A DNA stretch of 64,000 nt from Trichosphaerium sp. ATCC 40318 (Eukaryota > Protista > Tubulinea). The position numbers and the translations under genes are program-made. Shown piece by piece: positions 18,910-57,348 of the stretch (position 1 is its first letter; every line of letters starts with the position of its first letter). The notes beneath the pieces are model-generated. The model searched no databases. It worked only from the letters and a program-made list of their open reading frames with translations, and was not told the DNA's origin. The stretch covers positions 1-64,000 of the forward strand of contig JALMLS010000539.1 of the NCBI GenBank assembly GCA_038496445.1, in the 5' to 3' direction.

Positions 18910-20121
18910 TCAATTACGTTTATATATATGTTTTGTCCCAACAAGCGCTTTGATGCCTTCATTGGTTACTGGAGTATAGTTGAGGTAAATAGTATGAACG
19001 CCAACAAGTGCTTTAACACCTTCATCTGTTACTGAAGTGTTATTGAGGTTAATAGTATGAACACCAGCAAGTGGTTTGACACCTTCATCTGTTACTAAAG
19101 TGTTATCGAGGTAAATAATATGAACACCAGCAAGTGCTTTGACACCTTCATCTGTTACTAAAGTGTTATTGAGGTTAATAGTATGAACTCCAGCAAGTGC
19201 TTTAACACCTTCATCTGTCACTACGGTACGATAAAGGCTAATATAATGAACTCCTGCAAGAGCTTTGACACCTTCATCAGTTACTTTAGTATCGCCAAGG
19301 TGAATAGTATGAACACCAGAAAGTGCTTTAACGCCTTCATCTGTTACTGAAGTGCTATTGAGGTTAATTTTATGAACGCCAGAAAGTGCTTTTACGCCTT
19401 CATCTGTTACTGAAGTGTAACTGAGACAAATGGTATGAACGCCAGCGAGTGCTTTAACGCTTTTATCAGTTACTAAAGCGTTGGTAAGGTTAATAGTATG
19501 AACGCCAGCAAGTGGTTTGACACCTTCATCTGTTACTGAAGTGTTATTGAGGTAAATAGTATGAACGCCAGCAAGTGCTTTAACACCTTCATCTGTTACT
19601 GAAGTGCTATTGAGGTAAATAGTATGAACGCCAGCAAGTGCTTTAACACCTTCATCTGCTACTGAAGTGTTATTGAGGTAAATAGTATGAACGCCAGCAA
19701 GTGCTTTAATGCCTTTGTCAGTTACTGAAGTGGATTCAAGTACAATAGCATGAACGCCAGCAAGTGCTTTAATGCCTTCATCAGTTACTGTAGCACATTC
19801 GAGGTCTATAGTATGAACTCCAGCAAATTGTTTGATGCTGGTTTCGTCAAAATCACTTGAGCTAAGGTCTATCCAGGTGTTTTTCAGAATCCCACGATGT
19901 TTTACTACTGATTTTACTTGGTCTACAGTTTTAACCCTGATAGCGGTGTATCCGATAACGTCGTGAACAATAGAAGCGAATAAACGACAGGTTTGACAAG
20001 CTGCAAATCGTGATTTGAATGATGTTTGAAGCAAAATATGCGTTAATATCTCCGTAGGTAGATGCAACAAATTATTGCGTGCGATGTTGTCGATTTTATA
20101 ACGCGTTGAAATTAGAAGCAT
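18910..20121 (-). CDS. F-box + 21-aa leucine-rich repeat protein
   Basis: F-box LLHLPTEILTHILLQ..CQTCRLF followed by 14 tandem GVHTIxLxxTxVTDEGVKALA repeats in one open frame. Confidence 0.9.
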   Translation of the reverse strand: MLLISTRYKIDNIARNNLLHLPTEILTHILLQTSFKSRFAACQTCRLFASIVHDVIGYTAIRVKTVDQVKSVVKHRGILKNTWIDLSSSDFDETSIKQFAGVHTIDLECATVTDEGIKALAGVHAIVLESTSVTDKGIKALAGVHTIYLNNTSVADEGVKALAGVHTIYLNSTSVTDEGVKALAGVHTIYLNNTSVTDEGVKPLAGVHTINLTNALVTDKSVKALAGVHTICLSYTSVTDEGVKALSGVHKINLNSTSVTDEGVKALSGVHTIHLGDTKVTDEGVKALAGVHYISLYRTVVTDEGVKALAGVHTINLNNTLVTDEGVKALAGVHIIYLDNTLVTDEGVKPLAGVHTINLNNTSVTDEGVKALVGVHTIYLNYTPVTNEGIKALVGTKHIYKRN

Positions 20122-22543: not shown

Positions 22544-23843
22544 ATGGAGTCAACAGCAAGGTCAGTATTGACAATACATCTTTCCAAACTCTTGATTGCT
22601 AAAACCACGCAACAGATACGAAAATGAACCCACACGCCTTGTGGATCTCCCACCAGAACTATTAGCAATGCTTTTGGAGAAAACAACCGATAAAACGCGC
22701 TTCACCGTTGTAGCTTGTTGTCTAACACTCTCATCTATTATTCATAACATTATTGGGTTTAAAAGAGCAAATCTAACCAGAGTGTCAATGGTTTCAAATC
22801 TGTCGTCAATGCCAGGCGTACTCAAGAACACGAGACTTAAAATAAACCTCAAGTTTCTTAAATACGATAAAGCCGTAGAAGCTTTAAAGTATATTGAAGG
22901 TGTAAAACACGTTGACTTGTCACGTGGCATGGTAGTAGCTAAAGGACTAAAACACTTGTCCGGTGTTCATACTATTAGCTTGTCTTCAACCAAACTTAGT
23001 GGCTGGGGTCTAAAGTACTTGTCTGGCGTTCATGACATCAACCTTTCAAGTACCAAAATACGTGATCAACACTTAAAACATATATCTGGAGTCCATACAA
23101 TAGATTTATCTAACACGCGCGTAACAGAGTTAGCAGCACTTTCTGGAGTCCATACAATAGATTTATCTAACACACGCGTAACAGAGTTAGCAGCACTTTC
23201 TGGAGTTCATACGATTAACTTGTCACGTACAAAAATAAGTGGTTCTCAACTGGCGCATCTTGCTGGTGTTCATACGATTGACTTATCTCTTACACAAGTC
23301 GAAGATGTAAGCGCTCTCGCTGGAGTCTACTCTATAAACTTGAGACGTACAAAAGTAACTGAAAGTGTAAAGGCATTGGCTGGTGTTCATACTATCAATC
23401 TCAGTGACACTAAGGTAACTGATGAAGGTGTTAAGGCTCTTGCTGGTGTTCATACTATAAGCCTCGCTTATACTAAGGTAAGCGATGACGGTGTAAGCGC
23501 TCTTGCTGGAGTTTATTGTATAAACTTGAGACGTACAAAAGTAACAGATGAAAGTGTAAAGGCATTGGCTGGTGTTCATACTATCAATCTCAATGACACT
23601 AGGATAACTGATGAAGGTATTAAAGCACTTGCTGGCGTTCATGAGATATCTCTGAATTGTACTAGAGTTACAAATGCCGGTGTAAAAGCTTTAGCTGGTG
23701 TTCATACAATTGATCTCAGGTACACCAAGGTAACAGATGAAGGGGTACTTGCACTTATAGGTGTTAGTAATATACACCTTACAAAGACGGCTGTATCAGA
23801 TGATGTAAAGAAAGCTGTTAATGCCACAATCCATCAGTGGTAG
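22544..23843 (+). CDS. F-box + leucine-rich repeat protein (paralog of 18910-20121)
   Basis: ATG 22544 and intron 22561-22615 (GTCAGT..AACAG) give MESTARYENEPTRLVDLPPELL (F-box). Followed by tandem 19-21-aa GVHTIxL repeats. Confidence 0.88.
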
Positions 23844-33278: not shown

Positions 33279-33509
33279 AAGTTGTTCAAGACTTCCACTC
33301 AGAGATAGCTCTTTAATGGAACATACACCATTTTCCATATGCCCTGGTATACTAGAAAATATACTAAACACTTTTTGAGTGTATGCCAGATTTCAAGGTT
33401 TTTGTACAAAGAAGAAAGGAAAAAAATAAAAAAGAATGATAACACGTTTTGTAGTTCAATGAATAGATTTCTTTTTTTCTTCGGCAGTTGTTTACTATTT
33501 AACAAGATA

Positions 33510-34184
33510 ATGGCAACATATCTAGTCATAATAGATTTGGAAGCTACTTGTACACCATCAAAGAGTATGGCTCAACCTGTTCCTCAAGAAGTCATCGAGT
33601 TTCCCGCTATTCTTCTTAATGCTAGTTCAAATGAAGTAATTTCTGAATTTCACCATTATGTTCGACCTACAATACACCCAAAATTGCATCCATTTTGTAC
33701 CAGACTGACAGGTATCAAACAAGAAGTTGTGGACAATAGTGCAATATTACAAGATGTACTAAAAGAGTTTGACGTTTGGATATCAAAACTTGGTTTTGAT
33801 GAAGATGACTTTGCTGTTGTGACGTGTGGTGATTGGGATATTGGTTGCTTACTTTTGAATGAATGTAATCATAAGCAATTAGATAATCTATTAACCAAGA
33901 AGTATTGGCAATCTTGGATTAATCTTAAAGCTGTGTTTAAAAAATGCTACAATAAGAAAAAGGAACATTCTTTTCTAAAGATGATGGATTTTTTAGCATT
34001 AAAGATTATTGGTAGGCATCACAGAGGTATTGATGATACGAGAAATATAACTAGAATAGTTCAACAAATGGTTAAAGACGGATTCTTGGATGGATTTGCA
34101 ATCACAAGTGCAACACGTTTAAAAACAGTGAAACAAGCAGTGTCATCTTCCAACAAAACGTACACAGGCTCTGTTAGAGTATAG
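33510..34184 (+). CDS. ERI1/3'hExo-family DEDDh 3'-5' exonuclease, intronless
   Basis: IIDLEATC..EVIEFPA..FHHYVRP..P.L..FCT.LTGI.Q..VD, VTCGDWD, WINLK, GRHHRGIDDTRN. Confidence 0.92.
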   Translation: MATYLVIIDLEATCTPSKSMAQPVPQEVIEFPAILLNASSNEVISEFHHYVRPTIHPKLHPFCTRLTGIKQEVVDNSAILQDVLKEFDVWISKLGFDEDDFAVVTCGDWDIGCLLLNECNHKQLDNLLTKKYWQSWINLKAVFKKCYNKKKEHSFLKMMDFLALKIIGRHHRGIDDTRNITRIVQQMVKDGFLDGFAITSATRLKTVKQAVSSSNKTYTGSVRV

Positions 34185-34779: not shown

Positions 34780-35516
34780 CTCCAACGTGCTTTTTTATAA
34801 GGATTTTTTAGAAACCAAGTTGCATATCATTCAGTCAAAGTTCAAACATGAGGAAAGCTAGGGATTATTGTACAATCTATGGCATCTGAAGTCGTAACTA
34901 AATGCATTGGTTGGGATGGCTCAACAAACAAAATGGAGAAAATCATTTCTGTCTTATCCAGGATGGGTTGACTTTGTTACAAAATACAGAATTTTGTCCG
35001 AAATCTTTCGCAAACTTTTACAGCCACTCTATAATTCTGGTTTTGTGGGCTGTTGGAATTGTTAAAGGCACACAAAAGACGAGAATACGGGTACGAGAGA
35101 CGTGGCCTTAGTTGTAAGATAACATTTATTATTATTATGACGGGTCGTTACATAATTCAGAGAATACATTTTACCATTATCTCGATCGAGATGGCATGAT
35201 TAAAAGTAATCAGAGAATAGTAACGTATGCTGTTGCACGTTACTGTTGACTATTACGGATGTAGCCTTACACCACGTGATTATTTTGTTGATACCAATAA
35301 TTAGGAAACTCGTAGCTGTCATGAATGTAAAAGGTAAAAAGCTATTGCGCAATTATACGCTCTTATTAGCCACCTATCTCTCGTGTACGGATGGCTGTAA
35401 CGAACAATATTTTTCTACGATCATCTGTTTTTAGGCAAAATTAGCCTTCGCTTCACAGAATGGGGACGGAGGCTGTATAAGCAAACAGTAAAAAACACTA
35501 CAAACGAATACAACAC

Positions 35517-36463
35517 ATGCTAGACTCTATAAAAAGCTTTAACAAGGGTGAATTAAAGGAAACTGGTAAAACAGCCTTTAAATCAACAGCAACCGTTGAA
35601 GGAAGAAAGTTACTAGGCTCTATCCGTGGGTTTAACCGTAAAGAGTTGGCAGAACAAGATAAAAATATAAGAGGCGAGACATTGGTAGTTGCGAAGGGTA
35701 GATCGTGTTACGGCATGGATGGAGAGGATGCTACAGAATATTTCGACACAGACGAAGAAATAGCTCAAAAAGTAAAGAAACTCGCTGAATACGTCAAGCA
35801 ATCCAAGTACATGGTACGACAACGCGTACTGCGTAATAAACTCCGACGGTTTATTAATTACATTCACAGGTCGCTTTCACAGGCGCTGGTATATCAACAT
35901 CTAGTGGCATTCCTGATTTCAGAGGTCCCAAGGGTGTTTGGACGTTAAAGGAGCAGGGAAAGGTATATTTAGAAAAGAAAATGACAACTTTGTGCTAACG
36001 CGACTACTAGCATGCAAAGGGCGTCGATATGAAAAAAGCCAATCCTACAAAAGCACATGTTGCTCTAGCAAAGCTTGCCGATAAAGACATACTAAAATAC
36101 GTCGTTACAACAAATGTTGATGGGTTACATGAGAAGGGAGGGTTGCCTCCAAGTAAGTTTTGCGAATTACATGGCTCATTAAAGAAAGGGTATACGATAG
36201 CTTTTGGACAAGAGCTTCCAAAGGAAGAAATAGATAAGGCTATGAATCACTCAAACCAATGCGATTTGGCACTAGTTCTTGGTACATCTATGCGTGTATC
36301 TCCAGCAGCTAATTTACCAGAACATTCGTATAAAAACAAAGGTCACTTGGTTATTTGTAATCTACAAAAAACTCCTTATGATCGGTATGCTTCTATAGTA
36401 TTGCATGCGCGTACAGATCAAGTTATGGAGTTATTGATGAAGGAACTAGCTATTGACTTGTAA
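35517..36463 (+). CDS. Class IV (SIRT6/7-like) sirtuin with two N-terminal WH2/thymosin-like motifs and no Zn-binding subdomain
   Basis: Exons 35517-35813, 35870-35962, 36011-36463. Motifs [64 protein letters not shown]. Confidence 0.9.
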
Positions 36464-36516
36464 TAAAAAAATAAACTTGACTTAATTGAATTCAAATTCA
36501 ATTTTTTCGGCTACTG

Positions 36517-37491
36517 ATGAACACAAAGATGAAGCTGGTCGTTTTTATTTGTTAGTTGGTGTCTTACTGCTGTTCATAGACAAAGAAGCCAAAGAGCGCT
36601 CGAGAAGACTCAAATGGCAATGGTGATAAACGTAAAAAGCGCGTGGATGAAATACTGGGTGACGATAAGCTGTCACTGGCTTTTAAAGCCTTTTTACACG
36701 ATAGATACCAAGATGAAATATTTGAGTGCGTGAACTGTTCTTTGTCACCTACACGCGTTGTTCAGGCGATTAAAACCATTTCAAAACAGCTTGTATTAAT
36801 TTAGCAGTACAACGTATCAAATTTCTATTTACGTTACGCAATGCATTATAAGAAGCCAATTACTGAGTTTTATCGTATTTACTTTTTGTAATTGATGTAC
36901 GTTCTAACTTGCTTTAGCTTTTACGTTGAAGTCCTAGTGTTTGAAGAAACAAAAGAAAAGAATAATTTAAAGCGGTTGGGACTAGCTATTTACAGTCATT
37001 TTTTTTTGGAAGTATGTACTGTTTATAAGTCGTTTCTTTCTATTCTAATACTTACTTTAAAGGTTAAACTTCCTTGTACCAAGCGTGTGTCGGATAAGAT
37101 ATCGGCAGCAATACATTCAAATAGTTTTGATAATACGCTGTTTAATCTAGCTAAAGTAGAGGTCAGGCAATTGCTTGATACATATGCTATAGATTTTAAT
37201 GAAAAGGGTGATAAATCAGCTAAAATGAAGAAAGTTAAACAAGTTAAGAAATCAAAAGAAGCCGAAAGTGAAGACTTACGTGATATGATAAGTCAGTTAA
37301 AGTCTATTGTCTACTTGAGCTTTGATCATGTTCAACATGAGATTAAAAGCCTTGGACAAAGGCTTACGGCACTAGAACAGAACATGGACGGTGTTTTAGA
37401 TAAATTAGAAGATTTAGAGCAACATCAAACACGCCAAGCGCCAACAGAGAGTATAATGATGGACTTACTTGTTGATATGGACGCTGAATAA
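36517..37491 (+). CDS. RGS-domain protein with C-terminal coiled coil
   Basis: DEILGDDKLSLAFKAFLHDRYQDEIFDFYVEV..IYSHFF..V.LP..LFNLAKVEVRQLL, then heptads LGQRLTALEQNMDGVLDKLEDL. Confidence 0.8.
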
Positions 37492-45304: not shown

Positions 45305-46162
45305 TCAAACGCTTTTAGTTTGTTTTTTGCCATGTATCCACATGGACTGTTCCTTTAGTTGCCCATCCTCATACCATTCAGTGGACATGCTGTGTTGTTC
45401 ATTATTTACCCACAAAGAATGTTCCTTTTGTTGTCCATTTGCATACCATTCTTTAGTTTCACCGTTTAGTTTATCATCAACCCAAATAGAATATTCCTTT
45501 TGTTGTCCATTTTCATACCAATCTTTTCGTTCACCATGTTGTTTACCATGAATGGACATTAACTGGTACTTTAGTTGTCCATTATCATGCCATCCTTTGC
45601 GTTCACCATGTATTTTACCATCAATGGACATGTACTGGTATTTTATTTGTCCATTTTCATACCATCCTTTACTCTCGCCATGTTTTGTACCGTCAACCCA
45701 CATGCCTTGTGCTTGGATTTTTCCACTTTCATACCATTCTTTGCGTTCACCATGTTGTTTATCATCAACCCACATGAACTGGTACTGTAGTTGTCCATTT
45801 TCATACCATACTTTGCATTCACCTTGTTTTTTATCATCAACAAACATTAACTGGTACTTCAGTTGTCCATTGTCATACCATCCTTTGCATTCACCTTGGT
45901 TTTTACCATTAATAATCGTATGTTGGCTCTTCAATTGTCCAGTTGTGTGCCATGTTTTAATTGGACCATTCACCATGTGTTGATGCAAATAAACTTTTCC
46001 ACTTTTATACCATTGTATCCACATTCCTTTTCTTTGTAAAGTTTCATCAAAATGAGTATTAATTGCAGCTCTCTTTGATAGAGTATGAAACTTTGTGAAT
46101 ACCTCATTATTGAAAGTACAAATGTAAGTCTGAAGTTCACATGGAATATCCAATAAACTCAT
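45305..46162 (-). CDS. F-box-like + MORN-variant repeat protein, intronless
   Basis: MSLLDIPCELQTYICTF followed by ~8 24-aa repeats GQLKYQxMxVDxKxHGExKxWYEN. Confidence 0.85.
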   Translation of the reverse strand: MSLLDIPCELQTYICTFNNEVFTKFHTLSKRAAINTHFDETLQRKGMWIQWYKSGKVYLHQHMVNGPIKTWHTTGQLKSQHTIINGKNQGECKGWYDNGQLKYQLMFVDDKKQGECKVWYENGQLQYQFMWVDDKQHGERKEWYESGKIQAQGMWVDGTKHGESKGWYENGQIKYQYMSIDGKIHGERKGWHDNGQLKYQLMSIHGKQHGERKDWYENGQQKEYSIWVDDKLNGETKEWYANGQQKEHSLWVNNEQHSMSTEWYEDGQLKEQSMWIHGKKQTKSV

Positions 46163-56269: not shown

Positions 56270-57348
56270 TTACGCAAATGATGCCTCAACAAAAAACTCA
56301 ATACCAAGAGCTTCAACAGCTTCTTTAGTTATTCTACCAATTGAGTGTTCATCAACGCAAATACTCTTTAGATTCTTGAGGTACTTTAAACAATCATTTG
56401 TCATCAACGACTCTGTAATAGAGAGGTGCTCTACAGTGACCAAATGTTTAAGACCTTCATCACTAATTTCTCTGCAACCAAAGAGAGATAACTCCTTTAC
56501 CTTCTTCAAATGCTTAATACCATCATTTGTAATATCTGCAAGCCATACTGTAATTTCATCAACATGTGTAAGTGCAGCAAGCCATGAATCTTTTGCTGCA
56601 CTTCCAACAGTTACGCTTTGTAAGTTTTTGAGCTCTCTTAGTCCTAGTGGTGTAATACAATTACATTCATTAAGAAAAAGTGAACGAGATCCCTTAAGTG
56701 CTCTAAGTGAGGCATCAGTGATATCTGTAAAATGAACAGATATATCAAGTTCAATGTTTCCATTATCTGTTAAAGCTAGCACGCTTTTATCCGTTATGTT
56801 GGTATGACCAAGGTCTATCCTTTTAATACCAACAAGAAATGATATAGATTCATCTGTTATAGCCTTGTTGGACGCTACACTAAGACTTTTAAGTCCAGTA
56901 CCAACAAAAAGTTTTACAATATCATCAGTTGCGTCCTTTGGTAATGTCAAGTGTTGAACGCCAATGAGTGCTTTGTATCCCTCCTCTGTTGCGTGTGTCT
57001 TACAGACACGTAAATGGAGTTTACGTACACCGGCTAGACAAAATAAATCCGCATCTGCCAGGTGCTCTGGTCATCACCATCGTGAAACTGGTTGTCGGTT
57101 ATAATTATTTCCGTGCTTTTAAGCAGTGGGCTTGACTTAAGCACAGAACAGTCCCAACGCTTGGTTAGGTGTATCACGCCAAAGCCTATATCATTGCGAA
57201 TGATATTATTGAAGCGATGCGATACTTGAGACGCTGTTATACAAGCTTTTCTAGGTAAAAACCGTAGAATCTCTGCTACAGTCTCTCCAGGGAATTCTAA
57301 TAGAGTGGCGGATACACTAGGCGCTATTGCACGCTTTTTAGCCGCCAT
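56270..57348 (-). CDS. F-box + LRR protein with one frameshift near 57070 (pseudogene or assembly indel)
   Basis: LLEFPGETVAEILRFL..VSHRFNNIIRNDIGF..LKST; the shifted frame EHLADADLFCLAGVRKLHL.. is continuous with LRR ORF 56270-56950. Confidence 0.75.

What the first reader, a model, noticed from the sequence alone, without database searches (positions are those of the whole stretch)
35517..36463. Sirtuin fused to two WH2/thymosin-like actin-binding motifs and lacking the entire Zn-binding domain
Seen: the N-terminus has two repeats, [16 protein letters not shown] and [17 protein letters not shown], in the same exon that runs into the sirtuin core. NAD-binding and catalytic motifs ([31 protein letters not shown]) are intact. 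However, ELHG is followed directly by [15 protein letters not shown] (about 36170-36220) with no intron. Known: SIRT6/7-class sirtuins carry a several-dozen-residue four-Cys zinc module at this position, and WH2/beta-thymosin motifs (helix + LKKT) bind G-actin. Inference: a minimal Zn-free, actin-targeted NAD+-dependent deacylase or ADP-ribosyltransferase, or an NAD+ sensor coupled to the actin monomer pool. I do not know of a described protein with this architecture.
Basis: partly seen in the sequence, partly recalled or inferred. Interest (0 to 1): 0.78.

Follow-up and report, generated by a model that had tools for sequence, protein, structure and literature searches.

The report
Zinc-less sirtuin with thymosin-type actin motifs
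An amoeba-type gene that is transcribed and spliced encodes a small SIRT6/7-class NAD-dependent enzyme that has cleanly lost its zinc-binding module and begins with two beta-thymosin/WH2-type motifs, which suggests (untested) that it works on the actin monomer pool rather than on chromatin.

Summary
The gene is 35517-36463 (+), with three exons and two short GT..AG introns, and encodes a 280-aa class IV sirtuin. Spliced contigs from two independent studies match it exactly, including the [15 protein letters not shown] junction, so the zinc-less form is neither an assembly collapse nor a silent pseudogene. About 44 residues are missing relative to human SIRT6, including all four Cys and the loop that docks SIRT6 on the nucleosome acidic patch. 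44 of 46 other near-invariant class IV positions are kept.

The N-terminal motif is not a chance look-alike. About 40 of 265 related class IV sirtuins carry it roughly 68 residues upstream of GAGIS. The named members are all Amoebozoa. A profile built from 18 of them, excluding this gene and its closest relatives, finds beta-thymosins in the PDB at E 3e-8 to 2e-6. Many relatives add a polyproline tract or a CAP_C actin-monomer domain. Zinc loss is rare (3 of 265).

Actin binding and catalysis remain inferences. The scan flagged paralogues elsewhere in this genome (s1-411344, s1-378671, s1-372517). My result contradicts the earlier verdict that the thymosin/WH2 motif is unsupported. I found no paper describing it.

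The parts
35484..35516 (+). 5' UTR; likely transcript start near 35484-35488
   Evidence: cDNA contigs of X1 and X3 begin at 35483/35487 preceded by template-switch-oligo-like letters; no ATG before 35517
35517..35813 (+). Exon 1 CDS (aa 1-99): two thymosin/WH2-type repeats, then the class IV N-terminal extension and first helix
35517..35564 (+). Repeat 1 (aa 1-16, [16 protein letters not shown]): extra copy unique to this gene, with an LKET equivalent of LKKT
   Evidence: 23.6 bits against independent profile A3, 0 of 20000 shuffles as high; absent from all aligned relatives
35607..35657 (+). Repeat 2 (aa 31-47, [17 protein letters not shown]): the copy positionally equivalent to the family motif, 68 residues before GAGIS; LKKT position degenerate (LAEQ)
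   Evidence: AlphaFold2 helix over aa 27-37, pLDDT 70-90
35814..35869 (+). Intron 1 (56 nt, GT..AG)
   Evidence: skipped in contigs of 3 runs
35870..35962 (+). Exon 2 (aa 100-130): [19 protein letters not shown]-binding loop
   Evidence: Pfam SIR2 1.2e-6
35963..36010 (+). Intron 2 (48 nt, GT..AG, CTAAC branch-like site)
   Evidence: skipped in contigs of 3 runs; sequence
36011..36463 (+). Exon 3 (aa 131-280 plus stop): rest of the Rossmann core, TNVDGLH, catalytic [15 protein letters not shown]; the protein ends directly after the core
   Evidence: Pfam SIR2 4.6e-18; SIRT6 E 3.4e-26
36170..36172 (+). Catalytic histidine codon (ELHG)
   Evidence: 100% conserved column
36176..36199 (+). Junction SLKKGYTI that stands in place of the ~44-50-residue Cys4 zinc module
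   Evidence: identical in RNA-derived contigs
36470..36475 (+). AATAAA polyadenylation-type signal; longest cDNA contig ends at 36490

Best explanation
Shown: a transcribed, correctly spliced gene encodes a 31-kDa class IV (SIRT6/7-type) sirtuin. It keeps the NAD pocket and catalytic histidine but has precisely lost the Cys4 zinc ribbon. It starts with two beta-thymosin/WH2-type motifs, one inherited from a clade of sirtuins whose named members are all amoebozoan and one extra. Inferred mechanism: the N-terminal helix-plus-LK(x)T motifs dock on monomeric actin as beta-thymosins and WH2 domains do. This would hold the Rossmann-fold catalytic core, which begins only about 20-45 residues downstream, against actin or an actin-bound partner. 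There it would use NAD+ to remove lysine acyl groups or, less likely, to ADP-ribosylate. Loss of the zinc module removes the element that SIRT6 uses to clamp the nucleosome acidic patch, and no basic tail follows the core. This member is therefore most likely a non-chromatin, cytoskeleton-directed enzyme that couples NAD+ availability to the actin monomer pool.
For: Expression and splicing. Core integrity. The AlphaFold2 model of the sister protein P0001, which has the same junction, has mean pLDDT 91 and matches SIRT6 at TM 0.80 and rmsd 1.2-1.5 A. Motif: it is conserved about 68 residues upstream of GAGIS in about 40 of 265 class IV relatives. Profile A1 hits only thymosin, ciboulot and N-WASP chains in the PDB, best E 6e-4. 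Independent profile A3 hits thymosin beta-4/beta-9 at 3e-8 and 2e-6. 12 of 18 members hit Pfam Thymosin, best 2.5e-5. The window's two repeats score 23.6 and 13.1 bits against A3 with 0 of 20000 shuffles as high. Actin context: polyproline tracts lie just upstream of the motif in sister proteins P0073, P0074, P0075, P0078 and P0084. A CAP_C domain occurs in 12 of the motif-bearing relatives, in both orders. Extra C-terminal PPP-plus-WH2-like copies occur in some relatives. The SIRT6 zinc finger is the nucleosome acidic-patch anchor (R172, R175, R178, K170), and these residues lie inside the missing segment (PMC10942634). Acetylated actin (K50/K61) complexed with CAP is a known regulatory species (PMC7555357).
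Against: No binding or activity data exist. The window's repeats are below Pfam cut-offs, and repeat 2 has lost the basic LKKT residues (LAEQ). The constant spacing of the motif to the core could instead mean an intramolecular role. The zinc module is reported as required for deacetylation in canonical sirtuins (PMC12700824), so catalysis may be altered or lost. CAP_C-type beta-helices also occur in tubulin cofactor C and RP2, so that domain is not proof of actin binding (TBCC co-hits). Co-occurrence counts are not corrected for shared ancestry.
Confidence: 0.5

Rival explanations
1. The N-terminal motif only resembles beta-thymosin. It is a clade-specific regulatory, localisation or autoinhibitory segment that packs on the sirtuin core or binds another partner, and the enzyme is an ordinary class IV deacylase with other substrates.
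For: The motif has a fixed distance of about 68 residues to GAGIS in all arrangements, including CAP_C-motif-SIR2. The motif helix in the P0001 model has a fairly high pLDDT of about 80. The window's repeats are below Pfam cut-offs. An earlier follow-up on a paralogue judged the motif unsupported (s1-372517).
Against: Profile-to-PDB hits are specific to thymosin and ciboulot, down to E 3e-8, and extend through LK(K/P)TET, beyond a minimal amphipathic helix. The motif co-occurs with polyproline and CAP_C, a combination otherwise typical of actin-monomer regulators.
Confidence: 0.27
2. Without the zinc ribbon the protein is no longer a protein deacylase. It is an NAD+ glycohydrolase, an NAD+ sensor, or a catalytically inert actin- or partner-binding scaffold.
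For: The zinc module is described as required for deacetylation in canonical sirtuins, and naturally zinc-less sirtuins (ThsA, FAM118) process NAD instead (PMC12700824). The near-invariant Asn after HG is Ser here.
Against: 44 of 46 near-invariant class IV positions, the FG(E/Q) substrate-staple loop and the catalytic His are retained in two diverged copies (68% identity). This is stronger conservation than a scaffold needs. The protein is canonical PF02146/SIRT6-like, not of the SIR2_2 type. Ser/Thr after HG is normal in class I sirtuins (own knowledge).
Confidence: 0.18
3. It is a decaying gene copy or an assembly or gene-model artefact.
For: The zinc-less state is rare: 3 of 265 relatives, and only one single-stretch match among the best 150 of 1.84 billion representatives.
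Against: Exact spliced cDNA contigs come from two studies with no frameshift, stop or alternative exon. The ORF is intact and invariant residues are conserved. A second gene shares the same junction length. The model of that sister is confident across the junction.
Confidence: 0.03

Closest known systems
Human SIRT6 (e.g. PDB 3K35, 8F86) and SIRT7 (9GMK)
   Same: Best solved relatives by sequence: SIRT6 E 3.4e-26, SIRT7 6.7e-17. Also best by fold for the sister model: TM 0.80, 37-38% identity. Same NAD and catalytic motifs and the same class IV N-terminal extension (..KG..YG...EYFD..).
   Different: Lacks the whole Cys4 zinc finger, including the acidic-patch arginine loop. Has no C-terminal basic tail. 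Carries two N-terminal thymosin/WH2-type motifs.
Unstudied amoebozoan class IV sirtuins with the N-terminal motif (Balamuthia mandrillaris 'sirtuin-7' P0078, Pyxidicula operculata P0074, Mastigella P0146, Pellita P0183)
   Same: Same clade (support 85/95), with the same motif at the same distance from the core.
   Different: They keep the zinc module, have a single motif, and often have a polyproline tract in front of it.
P0001 (EukProt transcript, 257 aa)
   Same: Nearest relative: 68-69% identity, the same 9-residue zinc-less junction and an N-terminal motif.
   Different: Only one motif copy. I could not tell whether it is an orthologue or a paralogue because its source organism is not shown.
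SIR8 (Gold and Sinclair 2022, PMC9486876) and amoebozoan CAP_C-sirtuin fusions (Arcella P0123, Pelomyxa KAH3745828.1, Balamuthia KAL6074483.1, Flabellula P0203)
   Same: Class IV core. Many of the amoebozoan ones carry the same thymosin-type motif. Arcella P0123 is also zinc-less.
   Different: This gene has no CAP_C domain. The paper mentions no zinc loss, thymosin or WH2 motif, or Amoebozoa.
Beta-thymosins, ciboulot and WH2 domains (PF01290, PF02205)
   Same: Hydrophobic L/I/F triad at i, i+3, i+6, then (D/N)K..LK.T(E)T. Tandem arrangement as in ciboulot or actobindin.
   Different: Here the motif is a leader on an enzyme rather than a free small protein or part of a nucleator. The window's copies are sub-threshold for Pfam. 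Actin binding is untested.
Naturally zinc-less sirtuins: bacterial ThsA/SIR2_2 and human FAM118A/B (PMC12700824)
   Same: No zinc-binding module.
   Different: Those belong to the SIR2_2 lineage, which has a seven-stranded sheet, never had the module, and acts as filament-forming NAD processors. This is a canonical class IV enzyme that lost the module secondarily.

Membership tests
Sirtuin, Pfam SIR2 (PF02146), class IV (SIRT6/7 type) | Pfam SIR2 match above the gathering score | tested here: met
   Exon 2 scores 29.1 bits and exon 3 scores 66.2 bits against a cut-off of 24
Sirtuin, Pfam SIR2 (PF02146), class IV (SIRT6/7 type) | NAD-binding and catalytic motifs (GAGxS, xNxDGLH, catalytic His, GxS, NLQxT..D) | tested here: met
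   44 of 46 columns conserved at 90% or more are retained
Sirtuin, Pfam SIR2 (PF02146), class IV (SIRT6/7 type) | Closest solved relatives and fold are SIRT6/7 | tested here: met
   Sequence search. Fold search with the model of sister protein P0001, not of the window protein itself
Sirtuin, Pfam SIR2 (PF02146), class IV (SIRT6/7 type) | Cys4 zinc-binding ribbon in the small domain | tested here: not met
   About 44 residues are absent, and all four Cys columns that are 100% conserved in relatives are gaps here
Sirtuin, Pfam SIR2 (PF02146), class IV (SIRT6/7 type) | NAD+-dependent deacylase or ADP-ribosyltransferase activity | not testable with these tools
   Needs an enzyme assay
Beta-thymosin / WH2 actin-monomer-binding motif (PF01290, PF02205) | Pfam match at the gathering score | tested here: not met
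   Window exon 1: WH2 12.2 bits against a cut-off of 23.1, no Thymosin hit. Relatives: Thymosin hits in 12 of 18 with best E 2.5e-5, not checked against the cut-off except P0092, which is below it
Beta-thymosin / WH2 actin-monomer-binding motif (PF01290, PF02205) | Significant profile similarity to solved beta-thymosin/WH2 chains | tested here: met
   A1 profile: all 8 PDB hits are thymosin, ciboulot or N-WASP, best E 6e-4. A3 profile: E 3e-8 and 2e-6. Both window repeats match A3
Beta-thymosin / WH2 actin-monomer-binding motif (PF01290, PF02205) | Amphipathic helix with a hydrophobic triad followed by an LKKT/V-type motif | tested here: inconclusive
   Repeat 1 has L2/I5/F8 then LKET, but its structure is unresolved. 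Repeat 2 has L33/I36/F39 in a predicted helix, but reads LAEQ in place of LKKT
Beta-thymosin / WH2 actin-monomer-binding motif (PF01290, PF02205) | Binds G-actin | not testable with these tools
   No complex prediction or binding assay is available
SIR8 (class IV sirtuin with CAP-C, Gold and Sinclair 2022) | CAP_C (PF08603) domain fused to the sirtuin | tested here: not met
   No CAP_C hit, and the protein ends right after the core
SIR8 (class IV sirtuin with CAP-C, Gold and Sinclair 2022) | Nine-residue SIR8-specific motif | not testable with these tools
   The motif is shown only in a figure that is not held as text
SIR2_2 / antiphage-type and FAM118 zinc-less sirtuins | Membership of the SIR2_2 lineage rather than canonical SIR2 | tested here: not met
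   The only Pfam family is canonical PF02146. The nearest structures are SIRT6 and Sir2Tm

The most novel reading that the evidence does not exclude
A conserved family of class IV sirtuins, so far named only from Amoebozoa, is tethered to actin monomers by a beta-thymosin/WH2 leader, often reinforced by polyproline or a CAP_C domain. It acts as an NAD+-dependent eraser of actin lysine acylation, or as an ADP-ribosyl writer on actin. This gene is its minimal, zinc-free, two-repeat member, fully released from chromatin, and it links cellular NAD+ state directly to actin dynamics.
Probability: 0.3. Interest if true: 0.85.

Novelty: new variant of a known kind. Interest (0 to 1): 0.68.

Why it matters
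Two points would interest specialists. First, the zinc ribbon is regarded as indispensable for canonical sirtuins, and in SIRT6 it is the nucleosome anchor. A naturally zinc-free yet otherwise strictly conserved and expressed class IV enzyme is a ready-made test of what that module is for. Second, which enzymes remove acyl marks from actin is still poorly resolved: HDAC6 is implicated in mammals, and CAP with acetyl-actin is a known regulatory complex. A sirtuin lineage that carries beta-thymosin/WH2, polyproline and CAP_C modules offers a direct, testable candidate for an actin-directed NAD+-dependent enzyme. Full-text searches combining sirtuin with WH2 or thymosin found no paper describing it.

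Tried and rejected
- Pfam on the window's exon 1 gave only a sub-threshold WH2 hit, so I moved to family-level profiles.
- Rfam on the whole window found nothing.
- The window protein itself is not in the protein collections, and a spliced product has no reference. Structure and word searches therefore used the sister protein P0001 and single exons.
- A word search with the CAP_C part of Arcella P0123 found only itself.
- A metagenome scan with exon 3 returned only sirtuins at 25-35% identity and no close relative or further zinc-less copy.
- The findings look-up by sequence with P0001 was blank, which is uninformative. Whether P0001 is an orthologue or a paralogue stays open.
- The AU test did not reject a single origin of the three zinc-less proteins (p 0.355), although the best tree separates P0123 from them. 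One loss versus two is unresolved.
- AlphaFold2 of exon 1 resolved a helix over repeat 2 but not repeat 1, because no relative covers repeat 1.
- The protein-language-model atlas search put Thymosin and WH2 clusters nearest, but at 0.80-0.82, below the level that counts as more than a lead.
- All runs laid were contigs of unrecorded library type. Raw genomic reads were not checked, and expression level cannot be ranked.
- Neighbouring genes (RNase_T, F-box/LRR, MORN) gave no functional context.
- Rejected: a hidden intron supplying the zinc module. The contigs are continuous through 36009-36441 (X1, X3) and to 36490 (X2).

Full report
**1. What is in the sequence**

Reading 35200-36800 and translating gives a three-exon gene on the + strand:
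- Exon 1 is 35517-35813 (99 codons).
- Intron 1 is 35814-35869 (56 nt, GT..AG).
- Exon 2 is 35870-35962 (31 codons).
- Intron 2 is 35963-36010 (48 nt, GT..AG, with a CTAAC branch-like site).
- Exon 3 is 36011-36463 (150 codons plus stop).

The product is 280 aa. Pfam finds SIR2 in exon 2 (E 1.2e-6) and exon 3 (E 4.6e-18). In exon 1 it finds only a sub-threshold WH2 match (E 0.15, 12.2 bits against a cut-off of 23.1) over residues 32-41.

**2. Is it real and expressed?**

Contigs of three public runs from two studies (X1 and X3, 2023; X2, 2015) lie on the locus as one piece each. Both introns are removed exactly at the predicted sites.

Two contigs carry template-switch-oligo-like letters immediately before 35483/35487. 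They are therefore cDNA, and the mRNA starts about 30 nt upstream of the first ATG at 35517. No ATG lies in between. The X2 contig ends at 36490, just past an AATAAA at 36470-36475.

A collapsed assembly, a missed exon supplying CxxC...CxxC, and a silent pseudogene are all contradicted. One caveat: only contigs were available, not raw reads. This shows presence and structure, not expression level, and genomic raw reads were not inspected.

**3. The zinc module is absent; everything else is kept**

Against human SIRT6, the best solved relative (E 3.4e-26), exon 3 aligns in two blocks. Query residue 57 pairs with chain residue 136 and query 65 with chain 188, so about 44 residues are missing.

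In a 98-row alignment of class IV relatives, the four Cys columns are 100% conserved and are gaps in the window protein. 44 of the 46 other columns conserved at 90% or more are retained. These include T-GAG-ST, D.R, G.W, PT..H, N.DGLH, ELHG, the F of the FG(E/Q) loop, G.S..V.PA, I.NLQ.T..D and D. The two differences are Ser to Gly before a conserved Gly, and Asn to Ser just after the catalytic His-Gly.

The missing stretch contains SIRT6 residues K170, R172, R175 and R178. Cryo-EM and mutagenesis show these are the arginine anchors by which the SIRT6 zinc finger grips the nucleosome acidic patch (PMC10942634).

**4. Relatives**

A word search with exon 3 and then with its best hit gave these results:
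- P0001 is a complete 257-aa ORF from a EukProt transcriptome, 68-69% identical. It has the same 9-residue junction (ELHG-NMFRGNTV-GFG) and one N-terminal motif.
- Many class IV sirtuins are 45-55% identical and keep the zinc module. Those with names are Amoebozoa: Balamuthia mandrillaris, Arcella intermedia, Pyxidicula operculata, Mastigella eilhardi and Pellita catalonica.
- Arcella P0123 is also zinc-less and carries a C-terminal CAP_C domain.

I built a maximum-likelihood tree with the zinc columns removed. It puts the window protein next to P0001, inside a 16-row clade (support 85/95) of zinc-containing proteins that carry the motif wherever their N-terminus is complete. P0123 falls outside that clade. 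An AU test does not reject a single clade of the three zinc-less proteins (p 0.355), so one loss versus two is open.

I then ran a profile of the zinc-less cores against 1.84 billion representatives. Only P0123 among the best 150 was matched in one stretch. Every other hit was split in two around the zinc site. Among 265 fetched class IV proteins, only the window protein, P0001 and P0123 lack the module.

I could not tell whether P0001 comes from another species or is a paralogue. Its accession is not shown, and an earlier scan note reports a similar gene elsewhere in this genome. Either way, two diverged copies keep the junction and all catalytic residues, which argues for selection after the loss.

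**5. The N-terminal motif is a beta-thymosin/WH2-type motif shared by a whole sirtuin clade**

Fourteen relatives carry I..F(N/D)(K/R)..L in their N-terminal region. I aligned these with the window's two repeats to make alignment A1. As a profile against all PDB sequences, A1 returned eight hits at E up to 10. All eight are thymosin beta-9 or beta-4, ciboulot or N-WASP, with a best E of 6e-4.

Searching all fetched proteins with that profile found the motif in 37 proteins. It sits almost always 67-74 residues upstream of GAGIS, including in many proteins not used to build the profile. Examples are ..EIQNFNKNKLQKTETVV....SFDKSSLKHTETKV.. and ..SFDKSKLNHSETKEK..

I made a second alignment, A3, from 18 of those new instances only. 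None is from the window gene or its closest relatives. Results with A3:
- It hits a thymosin beta-4 construct at E 3.2e-8, thymosin beta-9 at 1.9e-6, and an actin-thymosin fusion at 1.5e-4.
- 12 of its 18 members individually hit Pfam Thymosin (best 2.5e-5), and 5 hit WH2.
- The window's repeat 1 scores 23.6 bits and repeat 2 scores 13.1 bits. None of 20000 composition-preserving shuffles reaches either value; the maxima are 14.5 and 7.8 bits.

Repeat 2 (aa 31-47) occupies the family position, 68 residues before GAGIS, but has LAEQ where beta-thymosin has LKKT. Repeat 1 (aa 1-16) is an addition unique to this gene and has LKET.

AlphaFold2 predicts a helix over the motif in P0001 (residues 2-10, pLDDT about 80) and over repeat 2 of the window protein (27-37). 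Repeat 1 is unresolved because no relative covers it. A protein-language-model search of aa 1-62 also puts Thymosin and WH2 clusters nearest, but at scores of 0.80-0.82, which count only as a lead.

This contradicts the earlier follow-up on a paralogue (s1-372517), which judged the thymosin/WH2 motif unsupported.

**6. Context pointing to actin**

- In the closest zinc-containing relatives, a polyproline tract lies just upstream of the motif (P0073, P0074, P0075, P0078, P0084). That is the arrangement seen in WASP-, VASP- and CAP-type actin regulators (established knowledge).
- Seven of ten longer motif-bearing relatives scanned with Pfam carry a CAP_C domain. It is either C-terminal (motif-SIR2-CAP_C: P0197, P0199, and Flabellula baltica P0203) or N-terminal (CAP_C-motif-SIR2: P0192, P0200, Pelomyxa schiedti KAH3745828.1, Balamuthia KAL6074483.1).
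- With a local CAP_C profile, 12 of 28 CAP_C-bearing proteins have the motif, against 30 of 237 without CAP_C. These counts are not corrected for relatedness.
- Some relatives add a second, C-terminal PPP-plus-WH2-like copy.
- The CAP_C fusion was published as SIR8 of sponges and cnidarians. That paper noted CAP_C's role in actin binding but does not mention zinc, thymosin, WH2 or Amoebozoa (PMC9486876).
- CAP bound to lysine-acetylated actin (K50/K61) is a known regulatory complex, with HDAC6 as the implicated mammalian deacetylase (PMC7555357).
- CAP_C-type beta-helices also occur in tubulin cofactor C, and some of these proteins co-hit TBCC. This line of evidence is suggestive, not proof.

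**7. Fold**

The AlphaFold2 model of P0001, which has the same junction and was built on a 98-row alignment, has mean pLDDT 91 and pTM 0.85, with values of 91-97 across the junction. Its best PDB matches are human SIRT6 chains at TM 0.80/0.75, rmsd 1.2-1.5 A and 37-38% identity. The Rossmann core is therefore predicted to stand without the zinc ribbon. SIRT6 already lacks the helical bundle of other sirtuins (PMC10942634), so this protein would have almost no small domain left.

**8. Most likely mechanism**

Shown: an expressed, zinc-free but otherwise intact class IV sirtuin with two thymosin-type leaders.

Inferred: the leaders dock on G-actin. The catalytic core follows within a few dozen residues and would be held against actin or an actin-bound protein, where it would carry out NAD+-dependent deacylation or, less likely, ADP-ribosylation. 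Loss of the zinc finger and the absence of any basic tail would remove chromatin docking.

I put about 0.5 on this whole picture. The rivals are:
- The motif has a non-actin, possibly intramolecular, role (0.27). The constant spacing to the core fits this.
- The enzyme has become an NADase, an NAD+ sensor or a scaffold (0.18), because canonical sirtuins are reported to need the zinc module (PMC12700824).
- It is an artefact or a decaying copy (0.03).

**9. Novelty**

Full-text searches combining sirtuin with WH2, thymosin or Amoebozoa, and with loss of the zinc module, found no description of a thymosin/WH2-bearing or secondarily zinc-less class IV sirtuin. The known naturally zinc-less sirtuins (ThsA, FAM118) belong to a different lineage.

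The protein is a sirtuin by every test except the zinc ribbon, so I rate it a new variant of a known kind. The scan had already flagged the same stretch (s1-400961) and paralogues elsewhere in this genome (s1-411344, s1-378671, s1-372517). This is therefore a small gene family rather than a singleton.

Noticed in passing
P0197, P0199, P0203 (motif-SIR2-CAP_C); P0192, P0200, P0253, P0281 (CAP_C-motif-SIR2): Class IV sirtuins fused to a CAP_C domain occur in Amoebozoa (Flabellula, Pelomyxa, Balamuthia, Arcella) in both domain orders, and many carry the thymosin-type motif. The 'SIR8' architecture published as arising near the origin of animals is therefore not restricted to animals; whether it is the same clade needs a labelled tree.
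   Followed up: partly
P0107:334-355, P0144:268-289, P0105:341-351: Some relatives carry a second, C-terminal PPP tract followed by a WH2-like LL..I..F...L..V motif, in addition to or instead of the N-terminal one.
   Followed up: no
P0265:1-35: A CAP_C-bearing sirtuin whose N-terminus reads ..LNHAETTEKN.., reminiscent of the LKHAET repeats of Acanthamoeba actobindin (from memory). My motif profile missed it.
   Followed up: no
P0085, P0087, P0089, P0093 and others; P0104, P0119, P0164, P0306; P0098: Sister clades of class IV sirtuins carry other targeting modules: N-terminal zf-UBP (PF02148), YEATS (PF03366) and ZZ (PF00569). This suggests modular re-targeting of this enzyme class; most of these proteins are unnamed metagenomic or transcriptome sequences. 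The YEATS fusions I saw (P0104, P0306) keep the zinc cysteines.
   Followed up: partly
window 33339-34184 (+): The upstream neighbour ORF has an RNase_T exonuclease domain (E 2e-25). It has no evident link to the sirtuin.
   Followed up: no
window 18910-20121 (-), 22596-23843 (+), 56270-56950 (-): F-box and LRR_6 repeat ORFs, already flagged by other notes of the scan (s1-404343, s1-401072).
   Followed up: no
window 45305-46162 (-): ORF made of MORN_2 repeats (E 5.5e-35), lying inside the stretch another note calls a triplicated aegerolysin-like region (s1-401006).
   Followed up: no
window 35462-35696: A 235-nt contig of run X6 (organism C, 2022) covers the 5' end with 2 differences and starts upstream of the cDNA 5' end. 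It may be DNA, or RNA of a related strain.
   Followed up: no
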